A DNA stretch of 64,000 nt from Bugula neritina (taxonomy: Eukaryota; Animalia; Bryozoa), in NCBI GenBank assembly GCA_964035545.1, contig OZ037772.1:5026233-5090232 (forward strand). The letters are read 5' to 3'. The notes under the pieces were generated by a model that searched no databases, was not told the DNA's origin, and was given only the letters and a program-made list of their open reading frames with translations. The translations under genes and the position numbers were made by a program. Below, one piece after another: positions 1-52,860 of the stretch (its first letter is position 1; the number at the start of each line of letters is the position of its first letter).

Positions 1-352
1 TGATAAACTTTACAAATTTAGAAACAACTATAAATCTGCATTTTGAAGTATAAAACAAAAATGGATTATTTTCAAAAACTACCAAAAATGATAGAAAATA
101 TTGTCGCATATACTAATAAAATATAAATTATATAACTGGTATTCAGCTTAAAGTCTTGAAAAGAAGAACTTATGCAGTATATTTCACACACATATGTGAG
201 ATTTATATCTAATAATGTCTTTTATTCCAACTTCATTTTTCATTAAATAAAATTTATATATCAATAAAAAACTTTACGCTAGAATTACATTGCTGTAGCT
301 TAAGATGGTTGTATTACTATATGATGTCTCAACTGGTATATGTTTACTATAG

Positions 353-493
353 CATGTCTAATCTGAAGAATCTGGAGACTCTTGATATGTCACATAATAA
401 CTTCAGTGAAGGATTACCTGATGTATTCACATCAATGACATCTCTAAGAGAGTTGAATATTAGTTCCTGTGAACTACCAAATCTACCTGGGAG
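353..493 (+). CDS. LRR exon 1 (two LRRs, 47 aa, phase 2/2)
   Basis: tactatAG|C...GAG|GTtagt; MSNLKNLETLDMSHNNFSEGLPDVFTSMTSLRELNISSCELPNLPG. Confidence 0.9.
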
Positions 494-3400
494 GTTAGTA
501 AGAATGTATTAAATAAAATGTTCATTAGTGTGAAGGATATAATTCTTCAATAGAAGTACTTTTTTTTTTATTAAAATTATCTACAGGTTTTAAAGTTCTA
601 TAGTTTTACAAATTTTCTGCGTTTCAAAAGTGCAATATATTAGGTATTATAGAATCACAAGTACCAACTGTGTTACATACTTCCCATTGAAAGTCAACCA
701 CCGGCTTGCCAGCTGACGCACTAACTATTACACTACAAGGGTAATCCTAAAACTCCATGCAACCAGTTATTCTAAACTCTGCTGGTTCCCTTACTACTCA
801 TTCAGTTTAGGCTTCCCGGGCCTCTCAACTCTCTTGGCGTACTACCAAAATGCTATACTAAATGTGAAAGAGTTTGCTAACAATTACACATGGGTCGTTA
901 GGTAATCTCAACACCACACCAAGCTGTTCACATGTGCATTCAGCTCCCTGCTACCATAAAGCTATTCACGTGCACTAACCGTCATGATGTAAGAACTTCA
1001 ATTACAGAAGGTTCTAATTTTACATGCCCCTCCTTTCAAATGGAAGGATATCACAATTACTAGACATCAAATTTTTATAAGCGCATTACAGAGATTACTT
1101 GATTAGCATGTGAATAAAATCTTAGTTGTATATATTATATGCTTCACTTGGTCTAATACATGAGCTGCCTACTTGTATGACACAGCAGATGTGCACACCC
1201 AAAATCTACTACAATATTACTAAATGATGTTTCAATTACTATATTATGTTTACTATAGCATGTCTAATCTGGAGAATCTGGAGACTCTTGATATGTCAGG
1301 GAATAAGTTCAGTGAAGGATTACCTAATGTATTCACATCAATGACATCTCTAAGAACGTTGAATATGCAGATCTGTGAACTACCAACTCTACCTGAGAGG
1401 TTAGTGAAAGCAACTCAATATGAAATACAAATAATATGTTTTTATCTGTAGTACACGATACCCATTTCTTTATACTTAAATTTTTTGCTGTCAGGTAATT
1501 TCTGAAAATTTTTCAAACCAGTGAAATTATTCTTGCCATATTGTATATAATATGCAAATAAATACAAGCCAATAAAAATATTCTATGTAGTATTATGACA
1601 TATGGTTCTAGAATATATGAAAGATGTTACAATATTTTAATCTCCTATATTCCTTAATGCTTCAATTAAGTAAAAGGTAATGAGTTAAGTTCAGTATATA
1701 ATTTTTTTTCAGAAGATATACAGCTTAAGCTCTATTTTATAATATACCTGCAGACTAAAACTAGCCATTGATCTGACAACATAACGTATAATTGATATCT
1801 AAATTATACAGTCTTTTATTAGATACAATAAAAATTGTTAATTTGACAATCTTCAAATTTTAAAATATAACAAAAACAATTTATTTTAGCAAATCTTATG
1901 TAATTATCGAAAAGAAATTATTATTTATATGTGAATAAAATTTTAGTTGTACATCTGATGCTTCACTCAGTTTTGAAAAAAAGCTCATGCTGCAGTACAT
2001 GTTTCACATTTATATGTAATATCTACTGTTTATCTACTAATGTATTTTATTCTAACTTCATTTTCAATCGAATGAAATCTGTATGGCAATCGGCAATTTT
2101 ATGCTAGAATTACATTGTTTTAGCTTAAGATGGTTGTATTACTATATGATGCTTCAACTGGTATATTATGTTTACTATAGCATGTCTAACCTGAAGAATC
2201 TGGAGACTCTTGATATGTCACAGAATAAGTTCAGTGAAGGATTACCTGATGTATTCACATCAATGACATCTCTAACTACATTGTATATGCAGATCTGTGA
2301 ACTACCAACTTTACCTGAGAGGTTAGTGAGAATGCATTAAATGAAATGTTCATTAGTGTGAAGGATATAGTTCTTCAATAGAAGTACTTTTTTTTAATAA
2401 AATAATCTACAGGTTTTAAAGTTCTATAGTTTTACAAATTTTCTGCGTTTCAAAAGTGCAATATATTAGGTATTATAGAATCACAAGTACCAACTGTGTT
2501 ACATACTTCCCATTGAAAGTCAACCACCGGCTTGCCAGCTGACGCACTAACTATTACACTACAAGGGTAATCCTAAAACTCCATGCAACCAGTTATTCTA
2601 AACTCTGCTGGTTCCCTTACTACTCATTCAGTTTAGGCTTCCCGGGCCTCTCAACTCTCTTGGCGTACTACCAAAATGCTATACTAAATGTGAAAGAGTT
2701 TGCTAACAATTACACATGGGTCGTTAGGTAATCTCAACACCACACCAAGCTGTTCACATGTGCATTCAGCTCCCTGCTACCATAAAGCTATTCACGTGCA
2801 CTAACCGTCATGATGTAAGAACTTCAATTACAGAAGGTTCTAATTTTACATGCCCCTCCTTTCAAATGGAAGGATATCACAATTACTAGACATCAAATTT
2901 TTATAAGCGCATTACAGAGATTACTTGATTAGCATGTGAATAAAATCTTAGTTGTATATATTATATGCTTCACTTGGTCTAATACATGAGCTGCCTACTT
3001 GTATGACACAGCAGATGTGCACACCCAAAATCTACTACAATATTACTAAATGATGTTTCAATTACTATATTATGTTTACTATAGCATGTCTAATCTGGAG
3101 AATCTGGAGACTCTTGATATGTCAGGGAATAAGTTCAGTGAAGGATTACCTAATGTATTCACATCAATGACATCTCTAAGAACGTTGAATATGCAGATCT
3201 GTGAACTACCAACTCTACCTGAGAGGTTAGTGAAAGCAACTCAATATGAAATACAAATAATATGTTTTTATCTGTAGTACACGATACCCATTTTTTTATA
3301 CTTAAATTTTTTGCTGTCAGGTAATTTCTGAAAATTCTTCAAATCTGTAAAAGTATTCTTGCTATATTGTAAATAATATGCAAATAAATGCAAGCCAATG

Positions 3401-6400
3401 AAAAAGATTCTATGTAGTATTATGACATATGGTTCTAGAATATATAAAAATGTCACAATACTTTAATTTCCTATATTCCTCATCGCTTGAAATAAGTAAA
3501 AGTTGATGAGTTAGGTTTAGTATATAATTTTTTTCTTGAAAAGATATACAGCTTAAGCTCTATTATATAATATACCTGCAGACTAAAACTAGCCATTGAT
3601 CTGACAACATAATGTATAATTGATATCTAAATTATACAGCCTTCTATTAGATACAATAAAAATTGTTAATTTGACATTCTTTAAATTTTAAAGTATAACA
3701 AAAACAAATTATTCTAGCAAATCACCTGTAATTGTTGAAAAAAATTTCTTTTATATGTGAATAAAATTTTAGTTGTACATCTGATGCTTTACACAGTTTT
3801 GAAAAAAGGCTCATGCTGCAGTACATGTTTCACATGCATATGTAATACCTACTGCTTATCTACTAATATATTTTATTCCGACTTCATTTTCCATCGAATA
3901 AATGTATGCATGTCAATTGGCAATTTTATGCTAGAATTACATTGCTTTAGCTTAAGATGGTTTTATTACTATATGATGTCTCAACTGGTGTATGTTTACT
4001 ATAGCATGTCTAATCTAAAGAATCTAGAGACTCTTGATATGTCAGGGAATAAGTTCAGTGAAGGATTACCTAATGTATTCACATCAATGACATCTCTAAA
4101 GAACGTTGAATATGCAGATCTGTGAAATACCAACTCTACCTGAGAGGTTAGTGAAAGCAACTCAATATGAAATGCAAATCAACTATGTTATCTGTAGTAC
4201 ACGACATCCAGGATTTGCTTGCATTTCTTTATACTTAAATGTTTTGCTGCCAAATAATTTCTGAAAATTTTTCAAACCAGTGAAATTATTCTTGCCATAT
4301 TGTATATAATATGCAAATAAATACAAGCCAATAAAAAGATTCTATGTAGTATTATGACACATGGTTCTAGAATATATAAAAGATGTTACAATATTTTAAT
4401 CTCCTATATTCCTTAACCCTTTGGCGATCAACTTTGAAGTTACGTAATTTCAAGCCTCGTTTGAGTTTATCGCGAAATTTGCTAACAAATTTTGCATAAC
4501 TTTCAATTTCAATATTAAAAAGTTACACTTGATTTTGGCCTTAATTAAACTGGGTAATATAATTTTAAGAGTCTTTTCTTTTATAAAAAGCTTCTTAAAG
4601 TGACGGGAGACCTCAATTCTAGCTAAAATCAGTCATTTTAATTTGCCTCTCAAAACCGCTATTTTAAAATTGAAAAATCAAAATGATAAAATTAGTTTAT
4701 AATATGATTCAAAATATAGTGAATTTAACATTTCTGTTTATTTAGATAATCTTCTAAATGTAATCTGAATAAAATAAACTGGCTCTCTATAATTTGACAG
4801 CAGTTTCATGCATTTGAAAGTAGCGTTAAAATTTACCGATAATTTTGAAATTTAAGGATTAAATTGAAAAGCAACTAGCTGGCTTGGTAGCTATTAATTT
4901 AATCAAATTTAATGGCTCTAATTTTTCCAAAATTACTAAGCTGCCCTATCAACCTCAATTACAAAAAGTTTTAGGCTTTTCGGTTGAAAACTGGAAGTTT
5001 AAAGTAAGCGCTATTGTTTGTTTACCTAAAAGACCATATATGGTCCATTGATCTGTGGATAGTGTCGCTTTCAGGGACATATATGGTCCATTGATCGCGT
5101 AAGGGTTAACGCTTGAATTAAGTAAAAGGTAATGAGTTAAGTTCAGTATATATTTTTTTTTCAGAAGATATACAGCTTAAGCTCTATTATATAATATACC
5201 TGCAGACTAAAACTAGCCATTGATCTGACAACATAACGTATAATTGATATCTAAATTATACAGTCTTTTATTAGATACAATAAAAATTGTTAATTTGACA
5301 ATCTTCAAATTTTAAAATATAACAAAAACAATTTATTTTAGCAAATCTTATGTAATTATCGAAAAGAAATTATTTTATATGTGAATAAAATTTTAGTTGT
5401 ACATCTGATGCTTCACTCAGTTTTGAAAAAAAGCTCATGCTGCAGTACATGTTTCACATTTATATGTAATATCTACTGTTTATCTACTAATGTATTTTAT
5501 TCTAACTTCATTTTCAATCGAATGAAATCTGTATGGCAATCGGCAATTTTATGCTAGAATTACATTGCTTTAGCTTCAGATGGTTGTGTTACTATATGAT
5601 GCTTCAACTGGTATATTTTTACTATAGCATGTCTAATCTGAAGAATTTGGAGAGTCTTCTTATGCCATGGAATAAGTTCAGTGAAGGATTACCTGATGTA
5701 TTCACATCAATGACATCTCTAAGATTGTTGTATATGCCGATCTGTGAACTACCAAGTCTACCTGAGAGGTTAGTGAGAATGCATTAAATGAAATGTTCAT
5801 TAGTGTGAAGGATATAGTTCTTCAATAGAAGTACTTTTTTTTAATAAAATAATCTACAGTTTCTAAAGTTCTACAGTTTTACAAACCTTCTGCATTTCTT
5901 AAGTGCAATATATTAGGTTCACGGTAGAATCACAAGTACCAACTGTGTTACAAACTTCCCATTAAAAGTCAACCACCAGCTTGCCAACTGACCCACTAAC
6001 CATTACACTACAAGTGTAATCCTAACACTCCATGCAACCAGTTATTCTAAACTCTGCTGGTCCCCTTACTACTCATTAAGTTTAGGTTTCCCGGGCCTCT
6101 CAACTCTTTTGGCGTACTACCAAAATGCTATACTGAATGTGAAAGAGCTTGCTAACAATTACACATGTGTCACTAGGTAATGTCAACACTACACTAAGCT
6201 GCTCACATGTGCATTCAGCTTCCTGCTACCATAAAGCTATTCACCTGCACTAACCGTCATGATGTAAGAACTTCAATTACAGGAGGTTCTAATTCTACAT
6301 GCCCCTCCTTTCAAATAGAAGGAAATCACAATTACTAGACATCAAATCTTTATAAGCGCATTACAGAGATTACTTGATTAGCATGTGAATAAAATCTTAG

Positions 6401-9400
6401 TTGTGTATTTTATGCTTCACTTGGTCTAATATATGAGGTGCACACTTGTATGACACAGTAGATGTGCACAGCCATAATCTACTACCATATTACTAAATGA
6501 TGTTTCAATCACTATATTATGTTTACTATAGCATGTCTAATCTGGAGAATCTGGAGACTCTTGATATGTCACAGAATAACTTCAGTAAAGGATTACCTGA
6601 GGTATTCACATCAATGACATCTTTAGGAGAGTTGCATGTGAAGAATTGTAAATTAGAAACTCTACCTGAGAGGTTAGTGAAAGCAACTCAATATGAAATA
6701 CAAATAAACTATTTTATCTGTAGTACACGACATCCAGGATTTGCCCGCATTTCTTTATACTTAAATTTTTTGCTGCCAAATAATTTCTGAAAATTCTTCA
6801 AATCTGTAAAAGTATTCTTGCTATATTGTAAATAATATGCAAATAAATGCAAGCCAATGAAAAAGATTCTATGTAGTATTATGACATATGGTTCTAGAAT
6901 ATATAAAAATGTCACAATACTTTAATTTCCTATATTCCTCATCGCTTGAAATAAGTAAAAGTTGATGAGTTAGGTTCAGTATATAGTTTTTTTCTTGAAA
7001 AGATATACAGCCTAAGTTCTATTATATAACATACCTGCAGACTAAAACTAGCCATTGATCTGACAACATAACGTATAATTGATATCTAAATTATACAGCC
7101 TTCTATTAGATACAATAAAAATTGTTAATTTGACATTCTTTAAATTTTAAAGTATAACAAAAACAAATTATTCTAGCAAATCACCTGTAATTGTTGAAAA
7201 CAATTTCTTTTATATGTGAATAAAATTTTAGTTGTACATCTTATGCTTTACACAGTTTTGAAAAAAGGCTCATGCTGCAGTACATGTTTCACATGCATAT
7301 GTAATACCTACTGCTTATCTACTAATATATTTTATTCCGACTTCATTTTCCATCGAATAAATGTATGCATGTCAATTGGCAATTTTATGCTAGAATTACA
7401 TTGCTTTAGCTTAAGATGGTTTTATTACTATATGATGTCTCAACTGGTGTATGTTTACTATAGCATGTCTAATCTAAAGAATCTAGAGACTCTTGATATG
7501 TCAGGGAATAAGTTGAGTGAAGGATTACCTAATGTATTCACATCAATGACATCTCTAAGAACGTTGAATATGCAGATCTGTGAACTACCAACTCTACCTG
7601 AGAGGTTAGTGAGAATGCATTAAATAAGAAGTTCATTAGTGTGAAGGATATAGTTCTTCAATAGAAGTACTTTTTTTATTAACATTTTCTACAGTTTTAA
7701 AGTTCTACAGTTTTTAAAGTTCTTCAGTTTTACAAACCTTCTGCATTTCTTAAGCGTAATATATTAGGTTCACAGTAGAATCACAAGTACCAACTGTGTT
7801 ACATACTTCCCATTGAAAGTCAACCACCGGCTTGACAGCTGACGTTCTAGCCATTACACTACAAGTGTAATCCTAACACTCCATTCAACCAGTTATTCTA
7901 AACCCTGCTGGTTCCCTTACTACTCATTCAGTTTAGGCTTCCCCGGCCTCTCAACTCTCTTGGCGTACTACCAAAATGCTATACTGAATGTGAAAGAGCT
8001 CGCTAACAATTACACATGTGTCACTAGGTAATCTCAGCACTACACCAAGCTGTTCACATGTGCATTCAGTTCCCTGCTACCATAAAGATATTCACGTGCG
8101 CTAACCGTCATGATCTCATAACTTCAATTACAGGAAGTTGTAATTTTACATTTTATCTGCAGACATATTGGCAAATTAATAAACATCAAATGAATATGAA
8201 GTCAGTATAAGCAGCTTTTTATGAAATAAATTACAAAAAAATTATTATGATCAATAATATTATCATTATTATCATAGTAGGTCAGTTCAGGTAGAATGCC
8301 TGCTACCAGACAATTATGAAAACCGGTACAACCTAATTCATGTGGCTAGTGGTCAGCGACTAAACTAACAAGTGAGTGTGACTGGACATCTTTAGGTCTG
8401 TGGTGGGGGGGGCAAGCCAGTCGGTGTGAGGTGACACACACTCCCAGAAGTGCAGGGATTAACATACCTCTCTCTTAGTCAGTCCCTGCCACGTAAGTGC
8501 TATAGGTCATGCAAAAGCCAGTAGTACCTTCACTTCTTTGCAAGCCGTTTTCATGAAATGGTACGTCAATAGCACATTCATGCCGGCTCGAACATCGCTC
8601 AGAATAAGAAGATCTGCACTGATCTGTTCTTACTCTGGCAGTCAGCGTACAGTGTGCTTGGAGACAGAAGGAAAAGGGAAGAGATTTTCCCTTATATGTA
8701 ACAGAATAAAATGCACAAACACTAATTGATCTATCACAAGCACAGAATCCAGAAAGACAGACAGCTCTTGTAGCCATGGAGATGGACAAATATGGCATCA
8801 TTGCCAGGCTATGATAGTTTAATAGATCATAGGTATTTCTTCTACTAGAGTGGAAAGTCAGCTGATGAAAGTTGAGAAGCAGGAGTAGGACTTGCCGTCA
8901 AAAAAGAAGATTGCTGCCACTTTGAAGGGCAAACCAACTCCTGTGAATGATTGAATCATGATGATGAAACTTCCTTTTCAAAAGAGATTTCACGCGATTA
9001 CTATGACGAATACTGAAGAAGTAAACAAACAGTTCTACATTTATCTGAGAGACACAATCCATTGTGTTCTAGCTAATGATATATTAACACTGAGTGGTAA
9101 TTTTGTTGCAAGGATAGGCTCAGTTTTTGAGAAATAGAAAGGAGTACTTGGTAGTCATAGTGTAGGTAAGTGCAATAGAAATGGAGAGTTGCTTTTAGCT
9201 CTCTGTTTAGAGTACAGTCTTGTGTTAGCCTAGGGCCACACGGTGCGTATTTTTGCATGCGAAAATTGAAATCACAAGTAGCAAAGGTGTCCACTGTATG
9301 CGTTGAGAAAACATTCGCACTTGTCGCTCTGCATTTTCAACGCAAGTGCGAATCGTCTCTGTCGTCGTCACCTAATTGGCTGGTAGTTATTCAGCGAGCC

Positions 9401-12400
9401 CAATTTCTTTATTTAGTGCTATATTCCAGCAAATTGCGTTTTATTGAAAGCGAGTGCGATTTAAAAATGAAAGCTTTATTTATCACGCATCACTGACGCT
9501 ACAGTGGACACCTTTGCTACTTGTGATTTTAATTTTCGCATGCGAAAATACGCACCGTGTGGCCCTAGGCTTAACTAATACCATCTTCAAACACAAGGAA
9601 TCACACAGGAGTACATGAATGCTTCCACAAGTTAACAAATGGAACTTACTGGATTACATCATTCTCAGGCGAAGGAATTTGAGTGAGGTTTTAGTTACTC
9701 GAGCTGTAAGAGGAGCAGATTGTGGCACAGATCATGTAATGCTAAAATCAAAAATATAAGGATTAAAAGATAAAACATTGCAAGAAAGCCACCAATTAAA
9801 CTAAGCACTGTTATGCTGAAAGATCCAGAAAAAACAGAACAACTTAAAAAGAAATTGAATAAGAATATAAAGTGTTGAGATGAAAATAATAATGAGATAG
9901 ACAAATGTGGAAAATTTTGAGGAAAACGGTGTTTTCAACTGCTAGTGAAGTGGTTGGGAAGCAAGGCCGTAAACATCCGGATTGGTTTAATGAGCATGAT
10001 GAGCTACTACGGCAGTTGATTGAGAAGAGAAACAAGGCAAGACAAGCTTTCTTCCAGTGTAATACCAGAGTGAAAAGAAAGAGCTGCTTAAAAGTGCAAA
10101 GCAGTCTTCAGAGGTATACCAGAGAAATGAAAAATAACTGGTGGGAAAAAAAAGCAATAGAACTCCAAATGTCAGCAGACAGAAAAGACATGAAAGCATT
10201 ATATTTAGGCTTAAAAGAAGTTTATGATCCGAAATCAAGAGTAACGATTCACCTACGAGACCATAATGGAAACACAGTTTTACACGAGAAGGAAAAAATA
10301 TTAGAAATAATATCTGATCACTTCAATCCTTTGCTCAACATACCAGGCGAGCTGGATAAAGCAGCAAAAAACATAATGCAAAGGTCACGTGTTGCACTTT
10401 TGGATGGTCCGCCCAATATGGATGAGCGTGTGTCGGCAATTAGTTCATTGCGGGATGGAGAAGTTGTTGGCAGAAATGGTATTCCATTTGTGGTATGAAA
10501 GCATGCTGGTCAAAAAATGGCAGGGTGTCTTTACAATACAGAATGTATGGGACACCTAGACGGTACCACCAGACTGGACAGAAGCAAGCATTTTTCAATT
10601 TTTAAGAAAGGCAATATGAAAGTAAACGGGAATTATCGGCACATATCTTGTATCTATTGTAGGCAAGATTTTCTCTTGCATACTATCGACTAATTGCACA
10701 TACTATCCAAGAGGTGCTAGTGGAGTCTCAGTGTAAATTCAGGAGTGCGGAAAGAAGTCCAAGTGTAAAAGAGGTGCACAGAACAAAATATGCTACTTTT
10801 CGCAGTATTTTTTGACCTCAGTAAGGCATTTGATATTGTATATATTGCAAGCCTTCGGCAGGTCCTTAAAAGGTTTGGCTTCCCAGACAAGTTTATTTGC
10901 AATAATGAAGCACCTCATACAGGCATGCAAGTATATGTACCAATGAGTAGTTCTACTGCAAATGGAAAGCTTGGAAAAGGTATATATGTGAACACTAGAA
11001 AAGAAGCAGACCTGTTTGATGTAACTCATTTCAACTTTAAAACCAAAACCTTTACCGAGTTAGAGACTTGTTAAGGAAATGACAGGTTGTTTTTTTAAGC
11101 TTTTCCGGAGTGTGTGGGATACCACGACTGTTCCACAACACTTGAGCAATGCAAGCATTATCCCATTATTTAAGAAAGGCAATACACCAGGGGTGGGAAT
11201 TACTGGGGCATATCCCCTCTATCTATTGTAGGCAAGACTCTTTCCCATTGCTATTAAATCGGCTAAATGCCCATATTTTCTCAAAGGTGGTACTAGAGTC
11301 TTAGTGTTTTTTCAAGAGTGGAAGAAGTACAATTGATATGGTTTTCTGCTTGAAGGAAGTGCAAGAGAAGTGCATAGAACAAAATATGCCACTTTGCATA
11401 GTATGTTTTGATTTCAGCAAGGCATTTGACACTGTTTCTAGAACAGGCTTTTGGCAAGTCATTAAAAGGTTTGGCTGCACAGAAAAGTTTACCGGCAATA
11501 CTGAAGCTTTTTATACAGGCATGCAAGCAAATGTGGCAGTGAACGGTTCCATCTCAAATGAATTTGCAGTAACAAATGCTTGAGGTTGTCTTTAAAGAAT
11601 TAGAAAAGAGTCGGATCTGTTTGATGTTAGTCATATCAAGTCAAAATTTAAGACCACTACTGAGTTAGTGAAAGACTTGCTATTTGCTGGTGATATAAGT
11701 ACTTCAGTTTTTTTTTGTTCTCATGCTATACAGACTCCGGTCAACAGATTTGCCAATGCTGCAAAATATTGTAATCTTCAAAATTAACATCGACAAGACA
11801 GAAAGCCTCTACCAGCTTGCAAAATTTGAAAATGAAGCATATCAGCCAAACCCTATAGCCATCAATGGATAACTTTTAAAAAAGTGTCAAACCTTCAAGT
11901 ACTTTGGAAGCACAATAGCAGTGAGCACTAAACAAGATAATAAATTTATCTGAGAATTGGAAGCACTAGTGCAGTGTATGAAAAGTTGAGAACCAGACTT
12001 TGCACTGATTGTTAATTTTTAATCAAAGTCAAGTATCAGATGTACCATACTATAGTACTCGCTGCCTTACTGTATGGTGATGAGACTTGGAACATACACA
12101 GTGTGCAAGTAGACAGACTGCAAGCATATGTCATGCAATAAATATGCTCAATCATGGGTGTATTTTAGAGAGACAAGATTACTAACCAAAAAGTACAAAA
12201 GAGAGCTAGCTTAGCATCTTCAAAATCTGTCCTTATTCAAATAAACTTGAAATAGCTAGGGCATCTCGAAAAGATAGGTCATAGCCACTTACCTAAACAA
12301 CTTTTTTATCCGCAGCTAAAAAAAAGTAAACAAAGCCAAGGGAAGCCAATATTGAGATTTAAAGACACTGTAAAGCGAAATATAAAAAAGTTGGACATGT

Positions 12401-15400
12401 ACAGAGATAGCTGGCAAAGGAAGGGTTAATGTAGATATGGATGGAGACGTTTGATCAAACTAAATTGAAAAGAGTCATTGTCGCACCGACAGACTGCTCT
12501 GATGACGACAGTGATGGTGATGATGATAATGATGATGATGATAATGATGAAAATTCTCCTTATTACTTTTATTGTTGTTTTAAGATCATAGAAAACCAGA
12601 TATTTAATTTGTTCAAAAAAAACAGTTAGGTTTGATGTATCTATAACATTATCTTTTATAACATTTTGCTGTATTTAGTTTACTTCCAAGTGATGCTGAA
12701 AAATTTCTACAGTAAAACAGTTGCATAGAGCTGAGGTTTTTTAAATGACGTGTTTAAGAAAAATTTCCAGTGATAAGTTTGCAGACATCTTTGCAAATGC
12801 ATTATCGTCTGAAATGGGTGAAATATATTTTTTTAAAGATCTTCAAAAGCTATATTCAGAAGCAACTTGTTTGCTAGAATCTGACTTATTATATATCATA
12901 TTTTATCTGAATTACAGTTTGCAGTATTTGGAGAATCTGGAAGTTCTGGACATTCAGCGCAACAACATGACTATAATTCCAGAGGCGGTCTGCAACTTGA
13001 AAAAATTACGTAAAATAGATGTTTTTGGATGTGAAAGTCTAACCACTCCCCCTTATGAAGTCTGTACAGAAGGATTATCAGCTATCAGACAATACTACAG
13101 AGATCTTGCTAAAGGTAAAGGAAAAAGTCTTCCCCTAGTCACCATTGCCGTGATTGGTAACACAATGGCAGGGAAAACGAGTCTCATCAGAACATTGCAG
13201 AGTGAAGAGAGAAAAAGAGTGCTGACAAATCGTGGACCTGAGGTTGCCGTTGACGAAACAACTAAAGTTTTTAAAGTCGAAGAGTTGAAAGTAAATAATA
13301 CAGTTTTGAGACTAATTGACATGGGAGGACAACCAGTGTATCACATGACATACCAGCTAACACTTAAACAAAACTGCATGCCGATAGTAGTGGTGAACAT
13401 GGAGCATTATCATCAGCTGGCACAAGAAAAGGGAGACAGAGAGGCTCTGAGAAGACTGGCTTTTGATTGGCTGGCTCATTTATATGTGGCAAATCCTGGA
13501 ATTAGACAACCGAAACTGGTTTTTACTCACAAAGACAAGTTTGATGAGGAGAATTTCACAAAGCTGACTTATAATTTCACTAACACAGCTGATCTACTGA
13601 AAGATGAAATTATCAGAGAAGAGAAACAACTAGACCAAAGCTTAGCAGAGATAGAACATTTCCATCAACACAAAGAGCTGTTTCTGCGTGAGGATATCTA
13701 CTCAGTTGGAAAAGAAGATACTTTTCAAGTTTTTGAGAATATGAAATCTGCCATTTTTAATTCAGCTCAAAAATTTGTAAAGGTATTGCCAAAACTATGG
13801 GAAGATGTAAATGAGAAGGTTTTAGGATTGCAGACAGCATTCAGTACATTTGATGAGATACTTCATGCAGTGCAACAAGTAGGTAGAAGTATCACACCTG
13901 ATCAGCTCACCACAATCCTCACCTACATGCATGATTGTGGTAAGGTCTTGTGGTACAAAGATATCAAGGAGTTGAACTTGATTATTTTTCACAAAATTGA
14001 GGAAGTTACTAAACTACTCAAAGTCTTGTGTCGTCATGATAAAGATGCGTGCCATACTTGGCAATCAAGTTTTCAACCATTGCGATTGACTAATGGAGCC
14101 TTTCTTGAAGAAGAACAATTTGGAAAACTTGTAAGAGATTTCTTGTCAGCAGGAATCATGGGAAGCCAACTTCTAGAATATTTATTCAAAGCTGAGACAG
14201 CATTCTTTGATGAAAATGCATACCTACTTGCTGTCACTTTGCTGCAGAAAATCAGCATTATCTACGGACCAGTTGATCTGGAATCAAGGAGCTGCTTCAT
14301 TGTTCCCTTCTACTCTACTGATTACTTTGAAAACAATCTTACTACTGATGAAGACGTCATTCTCCATGCTGAAATCATGTTCAAAGGTCTCTCAATTCCA
14401 CAATATGTCTACCAGCAGATGAGTGTTGTTGTCCTACAAATGTTCCCGGATGAGACAAGTTTTTCCCTTGTTAGAAAAAACGGAGTAAAGGTTTTCCACG
14501 ATGACATCTCGGTGCGCCTTGTCCATGATGGTCTTTCAAGGAAGGCAGATGTTACAGTGTCTGGAGCAACAGAGAAAATCACAAACTGTTGGAAACACAT
14601 GGTCAGCATAACCAGGCAAATATCCAAGGAGATTCGGCGTTCATGGCCTGCCAGCAGAATGGTACACAAGTCTAGTTGTACGCACTGCATTCTGAAAGGT
14701 GAATCCAGTCCTGAATTTCAGGTTACTCCCAGCTGGTGTCTTGAATTTCAAACTGACGAACCATATCATCAGTTTCAGAAGGAGATGGTGACAGTTCTCT
14801 GTAGAGGAGATAAGATTTTGAGTCCACTTGTTCATCCCTGTAAGTCAGTAATGAGTAGTTGTGTGATGTTTCAATTGCAAGTAATATCATACTAGTTACC
14901 TGTTTGCACCGCTGAGTGCATGTCTGGTGTTGCTATTCCAGGCACCTCTTTAACAAGCCAAGAAACTCAAAGTCTCAAGAACATCATTGCAGGACTGAGA
15001 GAAAAAAAACAAGAGAAAAGCTCCAAAAGTGGTGAGCTACAGCCTTTCTTCAACATCTAGTAAATCCTTTTCTCATTTAGTATGTTGGTCTATAGCAAAC
15101 ATAAATGTCAAGTTTCTTGTTTTTGCAATAGCAAAGACACTCTAAAACAAAAACAAACTAGCGCAAGGTGACCAATGCAAAAATCATTAGAGAAAAAAGT
15201 ACATAAAATCTAAGTGCCTACATTTATACATTTTTTTTTCTATCAGAGTATTATTTTAATGAAACAATATGATAATTTTTACAATACAGAAGCTGTCAAA
15301 TCTCATCAGCAAACCACCACCACCTCTGTGGAAGATGAGCTGAGTGATCTCTCTGATGATGATGAATATATTCTACCTCCACAATCTGCTGTTGACAAAT

Positions 15401-17621
15401 TAAAACATCTTAAGCAAGTCCCTGTCTTTACAACTAAACAAAGTATAAAAGAGCTCTTTTCAAACACTGAGAAGGTAATGTAACAGCTTTTCGTACAACT
15501 CTATGGAAAGCCTTCAGCATTGCTCAAAAATACATGTATAGTAGTAATTTAAAAATATTTGTACTATTTTTGTCTCACAATTATAAAAAAAGTGTGTTAT
15601 TAGTATTAACTTCCTAACGTGCCTGTGTTATGCTTTAAGGGTATGTTATTAATTTAGCATTATTAGGTTCAGCACTTCACCTATCATATGTATTCCAATT
15701 AGGTGTTTGGTATGACAATGCCAAGAGGAACCGCTTTGATAATCAACAATGAAAAGATAACCAATAGCTCAGACAGACCAGGTTCTCAAGTTGATGTTCA
15801 AAATCTGAGTGACATGCTACGATCCTTTCAGTTCAATATTGAGATGAAAACAGATCTCACAGCTGAGGTGGCAGTTATGACCAATTTTGTTGTTTCTTTT
15901 AATTAATTTTAAGCTATATAATCACAAGTGTTGTTATAAGCAAATTCGACTCAGATATAATATAAGAGCTGAGTTTAAATCTTTTGATTTCTAATAATTT
16001 ATAAGTTAAAAGTTACGATTGTGCTTCTCATTTGCTTTTATATACTTTTAACCGTCTGAATCGTTTTACAAAAGCTCACAACTTTTACACAAATATACTC
16101 ATTATTTCCAATTTTTTATACAAACAGGAAATATACCAAACGGTTAAAGCAGAAATTAACAACAGCAGAAATGCTGACCACGGAATGTTCTTTCTGTTCA
16201 TTGGTTCTCATGGAGTTGAGAATCATGTCTATGGATCAGATGGAGAGTTGGTAAAACTGACAGACCCGTATGACCTGCTATCTGTTCCTCAGAATCCAGT
16301 GGTTGCTGACAAGCCTAAACTGGTTGTCATCCAAGCTTGCAGCATTGGTGAGTATTCTATATTTTCCATCTTACTATAAGCCCATGTATTTCAGCATCAA
16401 AAGTACCTCTACCAATCAAATACAATATATGAATCATTTAGATCTACCTAAATCTAAGAAAACAGAACACCCTGGTGCTGAGACTGCTACACCTTCAGTT
16501 TCTGTTGCTAGTACCATAGACAGAAGTCTGCTGGAGAGACGTCATGGTGAAAATTTATATGTTATGAAAGCTAGCTTTCCGTGTGAGTAAAAAGTTCTTT
16601 TTTTTAGATTACTATGTTCTCTGTAGATATTTGCTTTTACATCTAAACATAAAGTTGTTCTGTATGTGCTAACTTTTTTACAAAAAACCAAAATATTGCA
16701 TTCCAGTTCATGTCAGTTAGTAGAGCAATTTTCACATTAGTAGTAGAAAAGTGTTGGTTCTGGCTCAATCCCTGACACCGGAGAGTCGAAGACTCGACGG
16801 GGGAAGGGGGTTGAGCCAGAACCAACACTTTTCTACTACTCACATTATTACTTATAGCTATTCAAGTACTAAAAGTTCAGCTTTGTTGTATATTGTATAG
16901 CTTATAGTGCCTGGAGATTTTCTGACTGTGGATCTCTATTCATCAGATGCTTTGTTAGGACCATGTACCGACATGCCGGTCACAGAGACATGCATGAGAT
17001 CTATAAAATTGTGAGTGTGCTACATTTCATCTGATATAATATAGTAACATAGCTTCTCTCAAAACTTGTTTATGTATTCGGTGTCTCATCTCTTTTGTTT
17101 TCATAACGTGAAAGACCATAGTAATTAAATGAAAATAACTCAGAAAGAAATAGAAACACTGATTATGTTGACTTTCTCAATTTGAGAATATTTCTACATT
17201 ATGTTTCAACTCACATTTAAGTCTAAGAATTCCTTCTGGGGTGACAAGTTGCATTATTTTTATGTAGGTACAAAATCGGGTTAGAAAATTTTGTACAGAA
17301 AAGAGACTTTCTCTTGGACAACTACCAGTTGCTACAGACACTCTGACACACCACAGAAAGCTCTACCTGTTTCCAGGATACAATGGAAGTTCTGGTAAAG
17401 AGAAGGAGCTGAGTTTACTTCAACTCAGAAAGAGACATCAACATCCTCCATCCAAGTCATTTCTGTCCAGTTTAGCTGCACAGTCCACACTGTCAGAGTC
17501 AGCTAGCACTTCACAGCAGGCAGAGAGTGGACAAGGCAGCAAATCAAATAACCAGAAGAGAAAATTAGACTCCAGCAAGGATAGCATGCAAATTATAAAA
17601 CACAGAAAGTTGAGTGAATGA
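353..17621 (+). CDS. LRR-Roc-COR-caspase fusion protein (ROCO family), multi-exon, 5' end outside window
   Basis: Exons joined in frame by GT-AG introns: LRR exons 353-493, 1259-1399, 2181-2321, 3085-3225, (4005-4146 frameshifted), 5628-5768, 6532-6672, 7464-7604; LRR+Roc-COR 12918-14839; linker 14942-15031, 15290-15474; caspase 15703-15867, 16128-16347, 16442-16582, 16901-17010, 17268-17621 (TGA). Intron phases match at every junction if exon 4005-4146 is skipped. Confidence 0.85.
631..1024 (-). mobile_element. LTR-like segment in type A introns (other copies 2457-2850, 5904-6299, 7755-8150)
   Basis: TG...CA ends with imperfect terminal inverted repeat (TGCAATATATTAG / TGTAAAATTAG); purine tract AAAGGAGGGGCA abuts the TG on the - strand. 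Confidence 0.5.
1259..1399 (+). CDS. LRR exon 2
   Basis: Same splice sites, 141 nt; LETLDMSGN / LRTLNMQIC. Confidence 0.9.
2181..2321 (+). CDS. LRR exon 3
   Basis: Same splice sites, 141 nt; LETLDMSQN / LTTLYMQIC. Confidence 0.9.
3085..3225 (+). CDS. LRR exon 4 (same protein sequence as exon 2, 1826 bp downstream)
   Basis: ORF translations at 1224 and 3050 are identical. Confidence 0.9.
4005..4146 (+). pseudogene. LRR exon 5, frameshifted (142 nt)
   Basis: tctctAAAga at 4098-4100 versus tctctAAga in sister exons; reads ...SLKNVEYADL*; splice sites intact. Confidence 0.8.
4417..5105 (+). mobile_element. piggyBac-type non-autonomous element (MITE)
   Basis: TTAA target duplication (4413-4416, 5106-5109); TIR ccctttggcgatcaa / ttgatcgcgtaaggg; empty site tccttaatgc near 1651 in the sister intron. 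Confidence 0.9.
5628..5768 (+). CDS. LRR exon 6
   Basis: 141 nt; LESLLMPWN / LRLLYMPIC. Confidence 0.9.
6532..6672 (+). CDS. LRR exon 7
   Basis: 141 nt; LETLDMSQN / LGELHVKNC. Confidence 0.9.
7464..7604 (+). CDS. LRR exon 8
   Basis: 141 nt; LETLDMSGN / LRTLNMQIC. Confidence 0.9.
8270..12550 (+). mobile_element. Decayed RTE-clade non-LTR retrotransposon in ROCO intron
   Basis: Broken-frame motifs ERQTALVAMEM, LLDYII..VTRAVRGADCGTDH, HPDWFNEHD, WWEKKAIELQ, FD(L/F)SKAFD, GKPILRFKDTVK; (GAT)n-like tail at ~12500-12550. Confidence 0.85.
9228..9570. mobile_element. PIF/Harbinger-like MITE nested in the RTE
   Basis: ~70-bp TIR starting gcctagggccacacggtgcg; TTA duplication (9225-9227, 9571-9573); removal restores LVLTNTIFKH. 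Confidence 0.85.
12918..14839 (+). CDS. Large exon: terminal LRRs + cap, Roc GTPase and COR domains
   Basis: Phase-2 acceptor attacAG|T; LENLEVLDIQRN; cap LTTPPYEVCTEGLSAIRQYY; P-loop GNTMAGKTS; G3 DMGGQ; G4 THKD; COR-like LTYMHDCGKVLWY; donor CCCT|GTAAGT. Confidence 0.9.
15703..17621 (+). CDS. Caspase (peptidase C14) domain exons and basic C-terminal tail of the ROCO gene
   Basis: PRGTALIINN, DRPGSQVDVQNL, catalytic SHG, KPKLVVIQAC, p10 motifs SYSAWR..GSLFI and RKLYLFPG across five exons. Confidence 0.9.
16739..16840. mobile_element. 102-bp inverted-repeat mini element with Polinton/Maverick-like ends
   Basis: 30-bp perfect TIR AGTAGTAGAAAAGTGTTGGTTCTGGCTCAA; 6-bp duplication CACATT (16733-16738, 16841-16846). 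Confidence 0.75.
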
Positions 17622-22796: not shown

Positions 22797-23759
22797 TTAG
22801 TTGATTCCCATAGGTCGAATAACTCTGTGAGAACGTGTACCTATTCTTAAAATGTTTCTCACATGATCAATGTATTTTGGATGAAAAAAAATAAACATGA
22901 AGACATTCACAATCCCATACAATGAAAACAGACTTGCACTGACTGTCTCTAATACAACAGCTAATTTTGCAAGAAAACTAAAACTCTGACAAATAAGAAA
23001 TACGACACCGAGCGAAAAATGAAGTTGATAAAGCAGATAACTCCATATAATATATTTACTGGCTGATATTACCAGCTCATCTCCTGGTAAATTTCTTTGA
23101 GCCATCAGCTTCAGCTCTTTCCATACTTTGACAAGGAAAAAAGATGTAATGAATGACAGAGCTAGGAGCTCGAGTGCATACAAGATATACACTACACTGT
23201 ATCCCATCTCTCTTGACACAATTTGTATTGCTATTGCAGTCCAACAGAATTCTACTGTTGCTATCATATTAAGTGCAAAACAGTTTAACACTCCTAGAAG
23301 ATAAATTATTCCAGTCATAGACTTTATATTGTTAATGAAAAGGTGTGTGCCATATCTGTATGGGTGACACACTCCAATATATTTCTCAACGCTTGAAACC
23401 AGAAACACAAGAACTCTTGAAAAGGTTCCACATGCGATTATAGAAATTAGAAGTTTTGAAACCCAATAAGCTGTTTGTACACCGAGCTGTAAAACAATTT
23501 CTTTAAGTTTGCAACTGAAGAACACAGCATCCGAAACGCTGTATATTATGTCAGATAAACCGATGTTTACCAAAACCCAGAAAAATTTGGTTCTCTTAAG
23601 TTCTTTCATTCGGTTGAGTATAATGAGATGCAAGACATTGACAATAATAGAGAGGCAGTTTATCCCATCATTAATCTGTACAAATGAGTGGTAACACTTT
23701 TCTGTCTCATTGTGACATGGTAAAATCTCGTCATATGATGAGGTGTTGTTTCCTTCCAT
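22797..23759 (-). CDS. Divergent class A-like 7TM receptor (GPCR), intronless ORF, paralog 1
   Basis: 320 aa, seven hydrophobic segments, N-terminal N-glycosylation sequons, TM2 IGLSD, TM3 end SVEKYIGVCHP (DRY-like), TM7 VNVFMF. Confidence 0.8.
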   Translation of the reverse strand: MEGNNTSSYDEILPCHNETEKCYHSFVQINDGINCLSIIVNVLHLIILNRMKELKRTKFFWVLVNIGLSDIIYSVSDAVFFSCKLKEIVLQLGVQTAYWVSKLLISIIACGTFSRVLVFLVSSVEKYIGVCHPYRYGTHLFINNIKSMTGIIYLLGVLNCFALNMIATVEFCWTAIAIQIVSREMGYSVVYILYALELLALSFITSFFLVKVWKELKLMAQRNLPGDELVISASKYIIWSYLLYQLHFSLGVVFLICQSFSFLAKLAVVLETVSASLFSLYGIVNVFMFIFFHPKYIDHVRNILRIGTRSHRVIRPMGIN

Positions 23760-26321: not shown

Positions 26322-27462
<1,141 letters not shown>

Positions 27463-52000: not shown

Positions 52001-52785
52001 TACTGGGACAACGTTAATACTTCTTCCAAAACGTGATATTGATACCTGTTTCAATAACAAAACAACTTTCCTAAAAGTATTACAATACATTAGTTCTAGA
52101 ATTGAAAACATTGCTTTGGTTGTAACTTGTGCTTTAGATAGATAATTAAAATGCTATATTATAGCTTATAGATGAGATCTTATAGAATCATAGTTATAAT
52201 GTAATTAATTTATTATAATCTACAGGTTAGACTATGATAGCATCACTGCAATACTGTGATCAGAGTGCAGGCAATGGCATTTATTTTTAATTTCTATAAT
52301 AACATCTACAATCTATAGATGAAACTTTAACATAATTTTTCAATTTAAATTTAAGCATTTTACCCTTCCTTTGCATTAAAAAGTAAGAACGTGCATGTTT
52401 TCAGAGTCGTCTGAAAAGGTAACTTTCTATTGTATTTAGCATTACCTCAGTTACATATAATATAATAAGCTATAATATTTTGTTTCACACCTATAATACC
52501 AATTGACTAATAAGTTATAGACTTTATTAATTATAAGGTGTGGGATAATATTTCAGCTGTTGAATGCCAACTGCCTGCTGATGGGATTGAGACAGATAAA
52601 GTTCCAGAAACTATCGACACCACCTTCTCTGGTGCCTACACTTACCAATGTAAACCTGGTTATGGATCGTGTGATTTTATGACCACTCAATTTACTGCAA
52701 ATGGCACATGGTCTTTACCTCTCCCACAATGCAAGAGTAAGTTTATTCTGTGCTTATTATAACCATTATACACAAAATATATATG

Positions 52786-52860
<75 letters not shown>

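What the first reader, a model, noticed from the sequence alone, without database searches (positions are those of the whole stretch)
353..7604. Cassette array of symmetric LRR exons with variation focused on the concave face
Seen: eight 141-nt exons, all phase 2/2, so any can be skipped, duplicated or swapped in frame. Framework residues are nearly invariant while x positions of LxxLxLxxN/C vary: LETLDMS(H/G/Q)N vs LESLLMPWN; LRELNISSC, LRTLNMQIC, LTTLYMQIC, LRLLYMPIC, LGELHVKNC. Established: these positions form the ligand-binding beta-sheet surface in VLRs and plant NLRs, and exon-shuffled LRR-ROCO genes are known in the brown alga Ectocarpus. Inference: a receptor repertoire diversified by exon shuffling, alternative splicing or both.
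Basis: partly seen in the sequence, partly recalled or inferred. Interest (0 to 1): 0.85.

Follow-up and report, generated by a model that had tools for sequence, protein, structure and literature searches.

The report
Shuffled LRR exon cassettes, bryozoan ROCO-caspase gene
A colonial marine animal (very likely the bryozoan Bugula neritina) builds the sensor end of a GTPase-caspase protein from a tandem array of interchangeable 141-base exons whose predicted binding-face residues evolve faster than neutral DNA. This resembles a candidate immune-receptor design so far described only in brown algae.

Summary
The array is real. Seven of the eight window exons are intact 141-nt, phase-2/2 units, each encoding two leucine-rich repeats (24 + 23 aa). 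The fifth (4005-4146) is 142 nt, frameshifted and carries stops. Exons 2 and 4 are identical. The array continues upstream of the window, giving at least 15 cassettes. It splices in phase into a Roc-COR exon (12918-c.14839) followed by caspase exons.

Variation sits on the predicted concave-face positions (permutation p = 5e-5 for the window, 3e-5 for 56 family exons). At those codons dN/dS is 1.5-1.9 against local dS (p = 0.02-0.04) and about 3 against shared dS. Their nonsynonymous divergence is 3.8 times that of the flanking introns.

Exact repeats of up to 889 nt next to blocks about 10% diverged show recent duplication or conversion inside the array.

The genome holds at least 242 candidate Roc-COR exons and at least 877 candidate cassettes. 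RNA-like contigs cover the exons only and include cassette-to-cassette junctions, but isoforms could not be resolved.

Germline exon shuffling with diversifying selection is supported. Alternative splicing and somatic diversification are untested. The closest precedent is the brown-algal LRR-ROCO family (72-nt cassettes).

First-stage readers of this scan noted similar arrays elsewhere in this genome; those notes are unchecked.

The parts
353..493 (+). LRR cassette exon 1 of the window (141 nt, phase 2/2, two LRRs). It is the 8th copy of the whole array.
   Evidence: ctatag|C...AG|gttagt, open frame; ends ...ELPNLPG.
1259..1399 (+). LRR cassette exon 2 (141 nt), identical to exon 4
   Evidence: lies inside the 889-nt exact repeat 579-1467 = 2405-3293.
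2181..2321 (+). LRR cassette exon 3 (141 nt)
   Evidence: A paralogous array 170 kb upstream (C8:4856558) has a copy differing at 3 of 141 nt, with homologous introns.
3085..3225 (+). LRR cassette exon 4 (141 nt), identical to exon 2
4005..4146 (+). Broken cassette: 142 nt, a +1 A frameshift and two in-frame stops, splice sites intact. 99% identical to exon 8.
   Evidence: Including it would truncate the protein before Roc.
4413..5109 (.). piggyBac-like MITE in intron 5 (19-nt terminal inverted repeats, flanked by TTAA); polymorphic
   Evidence: inverted repeat; a DNA-run contig joins 4412 to 5106 with 4 shared letters, which is the empty site.
5628..5768 (+). LRR cassette exon 6 (141 nt), the most divergent at face positions (LESLLMPWN ... 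LRLLYMPIC)
   Evidence: The upstream intron is 98-100% identical to that of exon 3, while the exons are 89% identical.
6532..6672 (+). LRR cassette exon 7 (141 nt)
   Evidence: Exon is 87% identical to exons 2/4, against 93-97% for the flanking introns. Its nearest relative lies in the upstream array (C8:4994918).
7464..7604 (+). LRR cassette exon 8 (141 nt), last cassette before the Roc-COR exon
   Evidence: Its final AG plus T at 12918 gives Ser and keeps the frame.
494..1258 (+). Intron of type a (about 765 nt, holds a SINE-like stretch). Other type-a introns: 2322-3084, 5769-6531 and the start of 7605-8140.
1400..2180 (+). Intron of type b (about 780 nt). Other type-b introns: 3226-4004, 4147-5627 (with the MITE) and 6673-7463. 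Order along the array: a b a b b a b a.
7605..12917 (+). Long last intron of the array, filled from about 8100 to 12500 by decayed reverse-transcriptase-bearing retroelement remains
   Evidence: broken ORFs with RT-like motifs and no LRR. No Pfam hit on the 197-aa ORF.
12918..14839 (+). Single large exon: last LRRs plus the Roc GTPase plus a COR-like region. The donor GTAAGT at 14840 is inferred.
   Evidence: Pfam Roc 30.8 bits against a cut-off of 27; homologues carry PF08477 and PF16095; aligns to residues 398-998 of a Watersipora LRR-Roc-COR-caspase protein.
15703..17387 (+). Caspase-domain exons (about 15703-15867, 16107-16352, 16894-17013 and 17256-17387). SHG and QACS active-site motifs are present.
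   Evidence: (Peptidase_C14, E = 4e-10 on two pieces)

Best explanation
The stretch is the 3' half of a germline array of at least 15 cassette exons. They encode the N-terminal leucine-rich-repeat solenoid of a single-chain LRR-Roc-COR-caspase protein in a bryozoan, very likely Bugula neritina.

Each 141-nt exon adds two LRR turns. Both flanking introns are phase 2 and the split codon is always Ser, so duplication, loss or exchange of a cassette keeps the frame.

The array changes through tandem duplication, unequal crossing-over and gene conversion between cassettes and between paralogous genes. The framework residues are kept. The residues on and beside the beta-strand of the concave face (positions 3, 5, 7, 8, and also 10) are driven apart by diversifying selection. 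This gives each gene, and the family of hundreds of genes, different binding surfaces.

Inferred, not shown: ligand binding by the LRR domain releases the Roc-COR switch. The resulting GTP-dependent dimerisation or oligomerisation brings the C-terminal caspase domains together and activates them. The protein would then act as an intracellular sensor coupled to cell death or proteolytic signalling, in immunity or self/non-self discrimination.
For: Exon status:
- Canonical AG/GT sites and an open frame in 56 of 61 sampled copies.
- Phase match to the Roc-COR exon.
- Contigs from RNA-like runs cover the exon bins and a repeated transposon but no intron bin. In run X8, contigs pass directly from a cassette end into a cassette start.
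- A Watersipora subatra RefSeq protein has six consecutive 47-aa modules of the same design in front of Roc.

Gene architecture:
- Pfam Roc on the large exon and Peptidase_C14 on the downstream exons.
- Watersipora proteins of 1413-1419 aa have LRR, a Roc-COR-like region (residues 398-998 of one align to the window exon) and a full caspase domain.

Shuffling:
- An 889-nt exact repeat and several of 185-272 nt lie next to blocks about 10% diverged.
- Exons and their flanking introns have different nearest relatives.
- 5 of 61 sampled copies are broken.

Selection:
- Entropy peaks at A5, A8, B3, B5, B7, B8 and B10 (permutation p = 3e-5).
- Nei-Gojobori dN/dS is 1.47 at exposed codons and 0.81 elsewhere.
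- In 27 independent pairs the ratios are 1.56 (p = 0.03) and 0.73, and the two classes differ (Fisher p = 4.5e-4).
- Using single-hit codons only, the exposed ratio is 1.87 (bootstrap 95% interval 1.18-4.04).
- The ML codon model gives omega 3.16 against 0.72 with a shared synonymous rate (p = 5e-17), and 1.64 with a separate synonymous rate (p = 0.02).
- In 13 pairs chosen on intron similarity alone, exposed pN is 0.25 against intron divergence of 0.066 (Fisher p = 9e-23).

Position on the fold: an AlphaFold2 model of the Watersipora LRR domain (pLDDT 81) places the strands at LRR positions 3-7.

Family size: at least 242 candidate Roc-COR exons, of which all 67 scored have E below 1e-181. 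At least 877 candidate cassettes, many beside Roc-COR copies on five chromosomes.
Against: - With the most conservative baseline (the synonymous rate of the exposed codons themselves), dN/dS above 1 is only marginally significant (p = 0.02-0.04).
- Synonymous divergence is also about twice as high at the exposed codons. Part of the excess could therefore come from exon-scale gene conversion or multi-nucleotide changes rather than from selection on point mutations.
- In intron-matched pairs, exon divergence is already about 80% of the family average. Short-tract conversion would produce that pattern too.
- The ML test used a single tree despite evident recombination.
- Only 61 of at least 877 cassettes could be sampled.
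- This particular gene carries a frameshifted cassette with good splice sites, so on this haplotype it may be a pseudogene.
- Its first exon was not found. It is unknown whether the LRR exons 28-40 kb upstream belong to it.
- No ligand, GTPase activity or caspase activation has been tested. The cytosolic location is assumed.
Confidence: 0.72

Rival explanations
1. Neutral birth-and-death. The array is a recently amplified, partly decaying repeat in which the face positions are simply unconstrained. The pattern would come from purifying selection on the framework, neutral drift elsewhere and gene conversion that mixes old variants, with no adaptive diversification.
For: - The frameshifted cassette 4005-4146 and the truncated copy at -3567; 5 of 61 sampled copies are broken.
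- dN/dS against local dS is only 1.5-1.9, with p = 0.02-0.04.
- Synonymous divergence is also raised at the exposed codons.
- Exon divergence is nearly decoupled from intron divergence, as conversion would give.
Against: - Every estimate of omega at the exposed codons is above 1, and the bootstrap interval (1.18-4.04) excludes 1.
- Exposed nonsynonymous divergence is 3.8 times the flanking-intron divergence, and already 0.21 when the introns differ by 4%.
- The Roc-COR exons of most paralogues are intact 650-750-aa open frames, so the family is maintained.
Confidence: 0.18
2. Combinatorial use at the RNA level. Cassettes are skipped or chosen in regulated ways, so one gene yields many LRR domains, as reported for brown-algal ROCO genes. 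Skipping would also rescue the frameshifted cassette.
For: - Every cassette is symmetric (phase 2/2, length a multiple of 3) with near-identical splice sites, so any skip stays in frame.
- A broken cassette with intact splice sites sits inside an otherwise intact gene.
- The algal precedent has up to nine isoforms (PMC11378527).
Against: - No isoform evidence was obtained. Logan contigs at this locus are 45-300 nt and map ambiguously.
- Symmetric exons follow directly from evolution by exon duplication and do not imply skipping.
- The Watersipora model shows plain tandem inclusion.
Confidence: 0.3
3. Somatic diversification of the DNA (VLR-like copy-choice or rearrangement among cassettes) generating cell-specific receptors.
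For: Only circumstantial. There is a dense array of near-identical cassettes with long exact repeats that could support recombination. Further LRR exons 28-40 kb upstream have no Roc-COR exon of their own.
Against: - The cassettes have ordinary splice sites and sit inside a normal exon-intron gene.
- The DNA run showed no rearranged cassette joints apart from paralogue cross-mapping and the empty MITE site.
- No cytidine-deaminase or recombinase link was examined or seen.
Confidence: 0.03
4. Assembly artefact: the near-identical units are a mis-assembled or over-expanded repeat.
For: The 889-nt exact repeat and the identical exons 2 and 4.
Against: - The units differ in many places and alternate two unrelated intron types in an irregular order, with a unique MITE insertion.
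- Contigs of the holder run X1 cover all 30 bins of the stretch laid (2150-7650).
- The same design recurs at hundreds of loci.
Confidence: 0.03

Closest known systems
Exon-shuffled LRR-ROCO genes of brown algae (Ectocarpus, Saccharina; Zambounis et al. 2012, PMC3341825; Teng et al. 2024, PMC11378527)
   Same: - N-terminal LRR domain in front of Roc-COR.
- LRRs encoded by equal-length, phase-2 symmetric exons in tandem.
- Genes clustered and expanded.
- Mosaic or shuffled exons and broken copies.
- Positive selection on concave-face residues.
- Proposed role as variable-ligand (immune) receptors.
   Different: - The organism is an animal, so the similarity is almost certainly convergent; homology of the arrays was not tested.
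- The cassette is 141 nt and holds two LRRs (24 + 23 aa), not 72 nt with one.
- A caspase domain follows COR. The algal paper never mentions caspase (0 occurrences).
- The family is far larger: at least 242 candidate Roc-COR exons against 37 genes in Ectocarpus (PMC4104024).
- Alternative splicing is documented in the alga but not here.
MFHAS1/MASL1 and other animal ROCO proteins (LRRK1/2, DAPK1)
   Same: LRR-Roc-COR core. RefSeq names the Watersipora relatives 'MFHAS1 homolog'. MFHAS1 and LRRK2 have been linked to innate immune signalling (PMC4104024).
   Different: - The vertebrate genes are single-copy, without cassette-exon arrays and without a caspase.
- Orthology was not tested; identity to anything outside bryozoans is low.
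- Trichoplax, the largest animal expansion mentioned in the review, has about 17 genes (PMC4104024).
Prokaryotic AP-GTPase/COR conflict systems with rapidly evolving N-terminal LRRs and variable C-terminal effectors (Kaur et al. 2021, PMC8195603)
   Same: Three-part logic of LRR sensor, Roc-type GTPase plus COR switch, and C-terminal effector domain. The LRRs are described there as rapidly evolving.
   Different: Those are bacterial, intron-less genes. No exon cassettes are involved, and the effectors differ.
Lamprey/hagfish variable lymphocyte receptors
   Same: Diversity is concentrated on the concave LRR beta-sheet and built from many LRR cassettes.
   Different: VLR cassettes are non-spliced donor segments copied somatically into an incomplete gene. 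Here the cassettes are ordinary exons of a complete germline gene, and no somatic change was seen.
NLR/NB-LRR receptors of plants and invertebrates
   Same: Large, clustered, fast-evolving families with LRR sensors under diversifying selection at the xxLxLxx positions, coupled to death signalling.
   Different: The switch here is a Roc-COR GTPase, not a NACHT or NB-ARC STAND ATPase. The protease is fused in the same chain rather than recruited.

Membership tests
ROCO proteins | Roc (Ras of complex) GTPase domain | tested here: met
   Pfam PF08477, 30.8 bits against a cut-off of 27, at residues 134-225 of ORF 12745-14895. P-loop GNTMAGKTS is present.
ROCO proteins | COR domain directly C-terminal of Roc | tested here: inconclusive
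   No Pfam COR hit on the window ORF at E <= 0.01. The roughly 430 aa after Roc align end to end with homologues that carry PF16095 COR-A (P0028, P0029, P0035; weak hits in P0033 and P0087).
ROCO proteins | Accessory repeat domain (LRR) N-terminal of Roc | tested here: met
   LRR_8 and LRR_4 at the start of the Roc exon. The cassette exons join it in phase.
Exon-shuffled LRR-ROCO receptors (brown-algal type) | LRRs encoded by tandem equal-length symmetric (phase-2) exons | tested here: met
   141-nt phase-2/2 exons. The unit holds two LRRs rather than the one 72-nt LRR of the algae.
Exon-shuffled LRR-ROCO receptors (brown-algal type) | Evidence of exon duplication or shuffling, gene clustering and rapid birth and death | tested here: met
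   Mosaic identity blocks and exact repeats. Exon and intron relatives disagree. Genes lie in clusters on C8 and C1. 5 of 61 cassettes are broken.
Exon-shuffled LRR-ROCO receptors (brown-algal type) | Positive selection on concave-face residues | tested here: met
   Omega at exposed codons is 1.5-3.2 by four methods, with p from 0.04 to 5e-17 depending on the baseline. Recombination was not modelled.
Exon-shuffled LRR-ROCO receptors (brown-algal type) | Alternative splicing of LRR exons | not testable with these tools
   Only short Logan contigs were available. Junctions were seen but isoforms were not.
Exon-shuffled LRR-ROCO receptors (brown-algal type) | Common descent with the algal genes | not tested
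   No phylogeny with algal ROCOs was made. The different cassette size and the animal host suggest convergence.
VLR-type somatically assembled LRR receptors | Cassettes are non-spliced donors copied somatically into an incomplete germline gene | tested here: not met
   The cassettes have canonical splice sites within a complete gene. The DNA run showed no rearranged joints. Tissue comparison was not possible.
Dscam-type mutually exclusive exon arrays | Only one exon of the array is included per transcript | tested here: not met
   RNA-like contigs pass from one cassette directly into another. The Watersipora protein has six consecutive modules. A solenoid needs many repeats.
Caspases (Peptidase C14) | Caspase fold with catalytic His and Cys | tested here: met
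   PF00656 at E = 4e-10 on two exon pieces. SHG and QACS motifs are present. The C-terminal pieces align to Watersipora full-length caspase domains.

The most novel reading that the evidence does not exclude
The cassette arrays are used combinatorially within one animal, through regulated exon choice or, less likely, somatic recombination. Different cells or zooids of a colony would then express different LRR-Roc-COR-caspase receptors. That would be an anticipatory, Dscam- or VLR-like repertoire wired directly to a death protease in a lophophorate, possibly serving colony allorecognition as well as pathogen sensing.
Probability: 0.1. Interest if true: 0.92.

Novelty: new variant of a known kind. 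Interest (0 to 1): 0.68.

Why it matters
Animals are thought to rely on NLRs, TLRs and a few lineage-specific systems for variable intracellular sensing, and ROCO proteins are usually single-copy genes of unclear function. Here a bryozoan has expanded an LRR-Roc-COR-caspase design to hundreds of genes. Their sensor domains are assembled from hundreds of interchangeable two-LRR exons, and the binding face is under diversifying selection.

This has three consequences:
- It is an independent reinvention of the exon-shuffled ROCO receptors proposed for brown algae, which strengthens the idea that Roc-COR can serve as an immune switch.
- It offers a natural single-chain sensor-switch-protease that could be used to study how Roc-COR (the LRRK2 core) transmits a signal.
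- It supplies candidate genes for immunity or fusion/rejection in a colonial phylum with almost no molecular immunology.

No paper in the searchable library links bryozoans with ROCO or MFHAS1.

Tried and rejected
- A fuzzy-regex scan for copies timed out and was replaced by blastn.
The selection tests therefore rest on 61 copies from the 34 loci already held.
- First self-blast listings printed nothing because of my length and identity filters. This was solved with exact k-mer runs.
- Rfam and tRNA scans of 1-13000 and 1-8300 found nothing. The SINE-like stretch in the type-a introns remains unclassified.
- The first exon was not found. ORF lists and tblastn with Watersipora proteins over window -30000 to -10000 found only transposon ORFs and cassettes. 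An apparent LRR read-through at -27983 was spurious.
- No Roc-COR or caspase copy lies between -40000 and 12918. The LRR exons at -40577 to -27841 are therefore either part of this gene or an orphan array.
- Read laying was meant to test skipping of the broken cassette and to find isoforms. The contigs were too short and mapped ambiguously, so there is no verdict. The joints 2273->3198 (X1), 3245->6520 (X2) and 3393->4306 (X3) have non-splice ends or replaced letters. I read them as cross-mapping of paralogues, not deletions.
- A Bugula spliced multi-cassette protein was not used for folding or database search. It has no reference, and I did not type it. The Watersipora homologue P0033:1-480 was folded instead.

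Full report
**What is in the sequence.**
Window 353-7604 holds eight copies of one unit, at 353-493, 1259-1399, 2181-2321, 3085-3225, 4005-4146, 5628-5768, 6532-6672 and 7464-7604. Each is preceded by ctatag and followed by gttagt. Seven are 141 nt with an open frame.
- Each unit begins with the last base of a split codon and ends with AG, so both flanking introns are phase 2. The split codon reads AGC, or AGT at the junction with the next large exon, which is always Ser.
- Each exon encodes 47 residues, two leucine-rich repeats of 24 and 23 aa. Repeat A is L-E-T-L-D-M-S-x-N-x-F-SEGLPDVFTSMTS. Repeat B is L-R-x-L-x-I/M-x-x-C-x-L-PTLPES-MSNLKN.
- The fifth copy is 142 nt. An extra A shifts the frame and produces two stops, although both splice sites are intact.
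- Exons 2 and 4 are identical.

The observation therefore holds with these corrections.

**The array is larger than reported.**
With 40 kb fetched upstream, blastn finds seven more copies at window coordinates -10893, -9482, -6300, -5548, -3567 (5'-truncated, without an acceptor), -2171 and -1554. A further group lies between about -40600 and -27841. No Roc-COR or caspase sequence lies anywhere between -40000 and 12918. The far group is therefore either part of the same gene or an orphan array. The first exon was not found.

**What gene it belongs to.**
- After a 5.3-kb intron filled with decayed retroelement remains, an acceptor at 12916-12917 opens a 1.9-kb exon whose first base completes the Ser codon.
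- This exon encodes the last LRRs, a Roc GTPase (Pfam PF08477 above its cut-off) and about 430 further residues. These align with COR-bearing homologues.
- Downstream exons between about 15703 and 17387 encode a caspase domain (Peptidase_C14, E = 4e-10 on two pieces) with SHG and QACS motifs.
- RefSeq proteins of the bryozoan Watersipora subatra, automatically named 'MFHAS1 homolog' or 'uncharacterized', have LRRs, a full caspase domain and, between them, a region that aligns to the window's Roc-COR exon, in 1413-1419 aa.
- Another Watersipora protein (P0033) has six consecutive 47-aa modules of exactly this design in front of Roc. The module is therefore older than the Bugula-Watersipora split, and modules are used in tandem.

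The genome has 216,009,554 bases, which matches the 216.00-Mb Bugula neritina assembly (PMC11480708). Runs from a 2016 'symbiont metagenome' study hold parts of the stretch. The species assignment is an inference.

**Expression.**
All runs were available only as short Logan contigs.
- Three runs (X2, X3 and X8; X8 is labelled RNA-Seq) cover the bins containing exons and the repeated MITE. They have zero depth in most intron bins. The holder run X1 covers all 30 bins.
- In X8, contigs pass from a cassette 3' end (...CTACCT + AGAAG or GAAAG) directly into a cassette 5' start (CATGTCTAA...). These are spliced cassette-to-cassette junctions, probably from paralogues, and they are absent from X1.
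- This shows that such cassettes are transcribed and spliced head to tail. It gives no information on isoforms or on whether the broken cassette is skipped.

**Is variation focused on the concave face?**
I fixed the exposed class in advance as positions 2, 3, 5, 7 and 8 of LxxLxLxxN/CxL in both repeats, 10 of 46 codons. An AlphaFold2 model of the Watersipora LRR domain (pLDDT 81, pTM 0.80) places the beta-strands at positions 3-7 of each repeat. This agrees with textbook LRR geometry.

From the 34 loci held I collected 61 copies, of which 56 are intact.
- Entropy peaks at A5, A8, B3, B5, B7, B8 and B10. L1, N9/C9, L11 and L14 never vary.
- Mean entropy is 1.77 bits at exposed codons against 0.52 elsewhere (permutation p = 3e-5).
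- For the seven window exons alone the values are 1.03 against 0.24 (p = 5e-5). The 10 exposed codons carry 53% of all amino-acid differences.

**Selection tests.**
- Nei-Gojobori over all pairs gives dN/dS of 1.47 at exposed codons and 0.81 elsewhere.
- In 27 disjoint nearest pairs the ratios are 1.56 (binomial p = 0.03) and 0.73. The two classes differ (Fisher p = 4.5e-4).
- Using only codons with a single difference, the ratios are 1.87 (bootstrap 95% interval 1.18-4.04) and 0.72.
- A GY94-type likelihood on a fixed tree gives omega of 3.16 (exposed) and 0.72 (rest) with one shared synonymous rate (LRT against 1, p = 5e-17). Giving the exposed codons their own synonymous rate, which comes out 2.3 times higher, lowers omega to 1.64 (p = 0.02).
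- In 13 disjoint pairs chosen only because their flanking introns are alike, intron divergence is 6.6%. Framework nonsynonymous divergence is 6.1% and framework synonymous divergence 7.6%. Exposed nonsynonymous divergence is 25%, which is 3.8 times the intron rate (p = 9e-23).
- Binned by intron divergence, exposed pN is already 0.21 at 4% intron divergence and saturates near 0.3. Framework sites plateau at about 0.08 even when introns reach 24%.

Taken together, the framework is conserved or homogenised while the face positions turn over very fast.

The main caveat is that exon divergence in intron-matched pairs is about 80% of the family-wide average. Short-tract gene conversion that swaps whole exon variants would produce this too. 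That is shuffling rather than point-mutation selection, and the two are not separated here.

**Shuffling.**
- Two unrelated intron types alternate irregularly along the array (a b a b b a b a).
- Identity along aligned units jumps between blocks with no mismatches per 100 nt and blocks with about 10.
- The longest exact repeat is 889 nt (579-1467 = 2405-3293). Others of 272, 196, 194 and 185 nt link different unit pairs.
- Exon 3 and exon 6 share a 98-100% identical upstream intron but are only 89% identical themselves. Exon 7 is 87% identical to exons 2/4, while its introns are 93-97% identical to theirs.
- In paralogous arrays, the best-matching focal exon and the best-matching focal introns usually differ.
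- Five of the 61 copies are broken.

These are the marks of repeated unequal exchange or conversion and of birth-and-death evolution.

**Scale.**
- The Roc-COR exon has at least 242 first-look candidates in the genome. All 67 that were scored have E below 1e-181, and most are uninterrupted.
- The 46-aa cassette has at least 877 candidates. All 150 scored match end to end, many in tight arrays just upstream of Roc-COR copies on five chromosomes. Some are spaced only about 275 nt apart.
- First-stage readers of this scan noted similar arrays (138, 141 and 144 nt) and LRR-Roc-COR-caspase genes in many other windows of this genome. Those notes are unchecked and are not counted as evidence.

**Comparison with the known.**
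- The closest described system is the brown-algal LRR-ROCO family. It has 72-nt phase-2 exons with one LRR each, shuffling, positive selection on the concave face and alternative splicing (PMC3341825, PMC11378527).
- The bryozoan version differs in host kingdom, cassette size (two LRRs), the fused caspase and family size.
- Searches for bryozoans together with ROCO, MFHAS1 or Roc found nothing relevant.
- I file it as a ROCO protein. Roc and LRR are met; COR is supported only through homologues. It is a new variant of the exon-shuffled LRR-ROCO kind.
- It is not VLR-like in mechanism, because the cassettes have splice sites and no rearranged DNA was seen. It is not Dscam-like either, because the cassettes are used in tandem.

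**Mechanism.**
Shown:
- the cassette architecture and its frame-neutral modularity;
- the mosaic history of the array;
- accelerated change at the face positions;
- linkage to Roc-COR and caspase exons.

Inferred:
- the LRR face binds variable ligands;
- binding is transmitted through Roc-COR dimerisation to proximity activation of the caspase;
- the biological role is immunity or allorecognition.

This particular copy may be non-functional on this haplotype unless the frameshifted cassette is skipped.

Noticed in passing
window 4413-5109: A 697-nt MITE with 19-nt terminal inverted repeats (TTAACCCTTTGGCGATCAA...) flanked by TTAA, which is piggyBac-like. A contig of the DNA holder run joins 4412 to 5106, so the insertion is polymorphic or heterozygous. 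The element is highly repeated, with very high word depth in all runs.
   Followed up: partly
window 4005-4146: A cassette with a +1 frameshift but perfect splice sites, 99% identical to the last cassette (7464-7604). It is either skipped, a null allele, or a recent conversion product that carried a mutation.
   Followed up: partly
upstream of the window: C8:4985656-4998391 (window about -40600 to -27841): A second group of at least 8 LRR cassette exons with no Roc-COR or caspase exon before the focal array. A 17-kb transposon-rich gap follows. It could be an orphan cassette reservoir or the 5' part of one very long gene.
   Followed up: partly
whole genome: At least 242 candidate Roc-COR exons and at least 877 candidate 47-aa LRR cassettes, concentrated on C1:33.8-35.5 Mb, C6:2.6-6.2 Mb, C5 and C8. 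Some arrays have about 275-nt spacing, which implies introns of about 135 nt. If confirmed, this would exceed the ROCO expansions mentioned in the review I read (about 17 genes in Trichoplax, 37 in Ectocarpus).
   Followed up: partly
window 650-1000, 2476-2830, 5925-6280, 7776-8130: A roughly 350-nt stretch shared by all type-a introns has a higher GC content and looks like a SINE. There was no tRNA or Rfam hit.
   Followed up: partly
window 9229-9569: A near-perfect long inverted repeat (foldback element) is inserted in the decayed retroelement that fills the last intron of the array.
   Followed up: no
window 22797-23759 (-) and 33684-34646 (-): Two intron-less 320-aa rhodopsin-type GPCR-like paralogues (weak Pfam 7tm_1, below its cut-off), nearly identical to each other. 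They flank inverted copies of a transposon ORF (26723-27493 on the minus strand, 29552-30325 on the plus strand) and a 394-aa ORF that also occurs upstream of the window.
   Followed up: no
window 52600-55300: A long GT/CA-rich minisatellite with strong GC skew gives many spurious ORFs (CVCV/HTHT peptides).
   Followed up: no
exposed codons of the cassette family: Synonymous divergence is about twice as high at the hypervariable codons as in the rest of the exon. Possible causes are multi-nucleotide substitutions, conversion of short tracts, or a counting artefact. This remains unexplained.
   Followed up: partly
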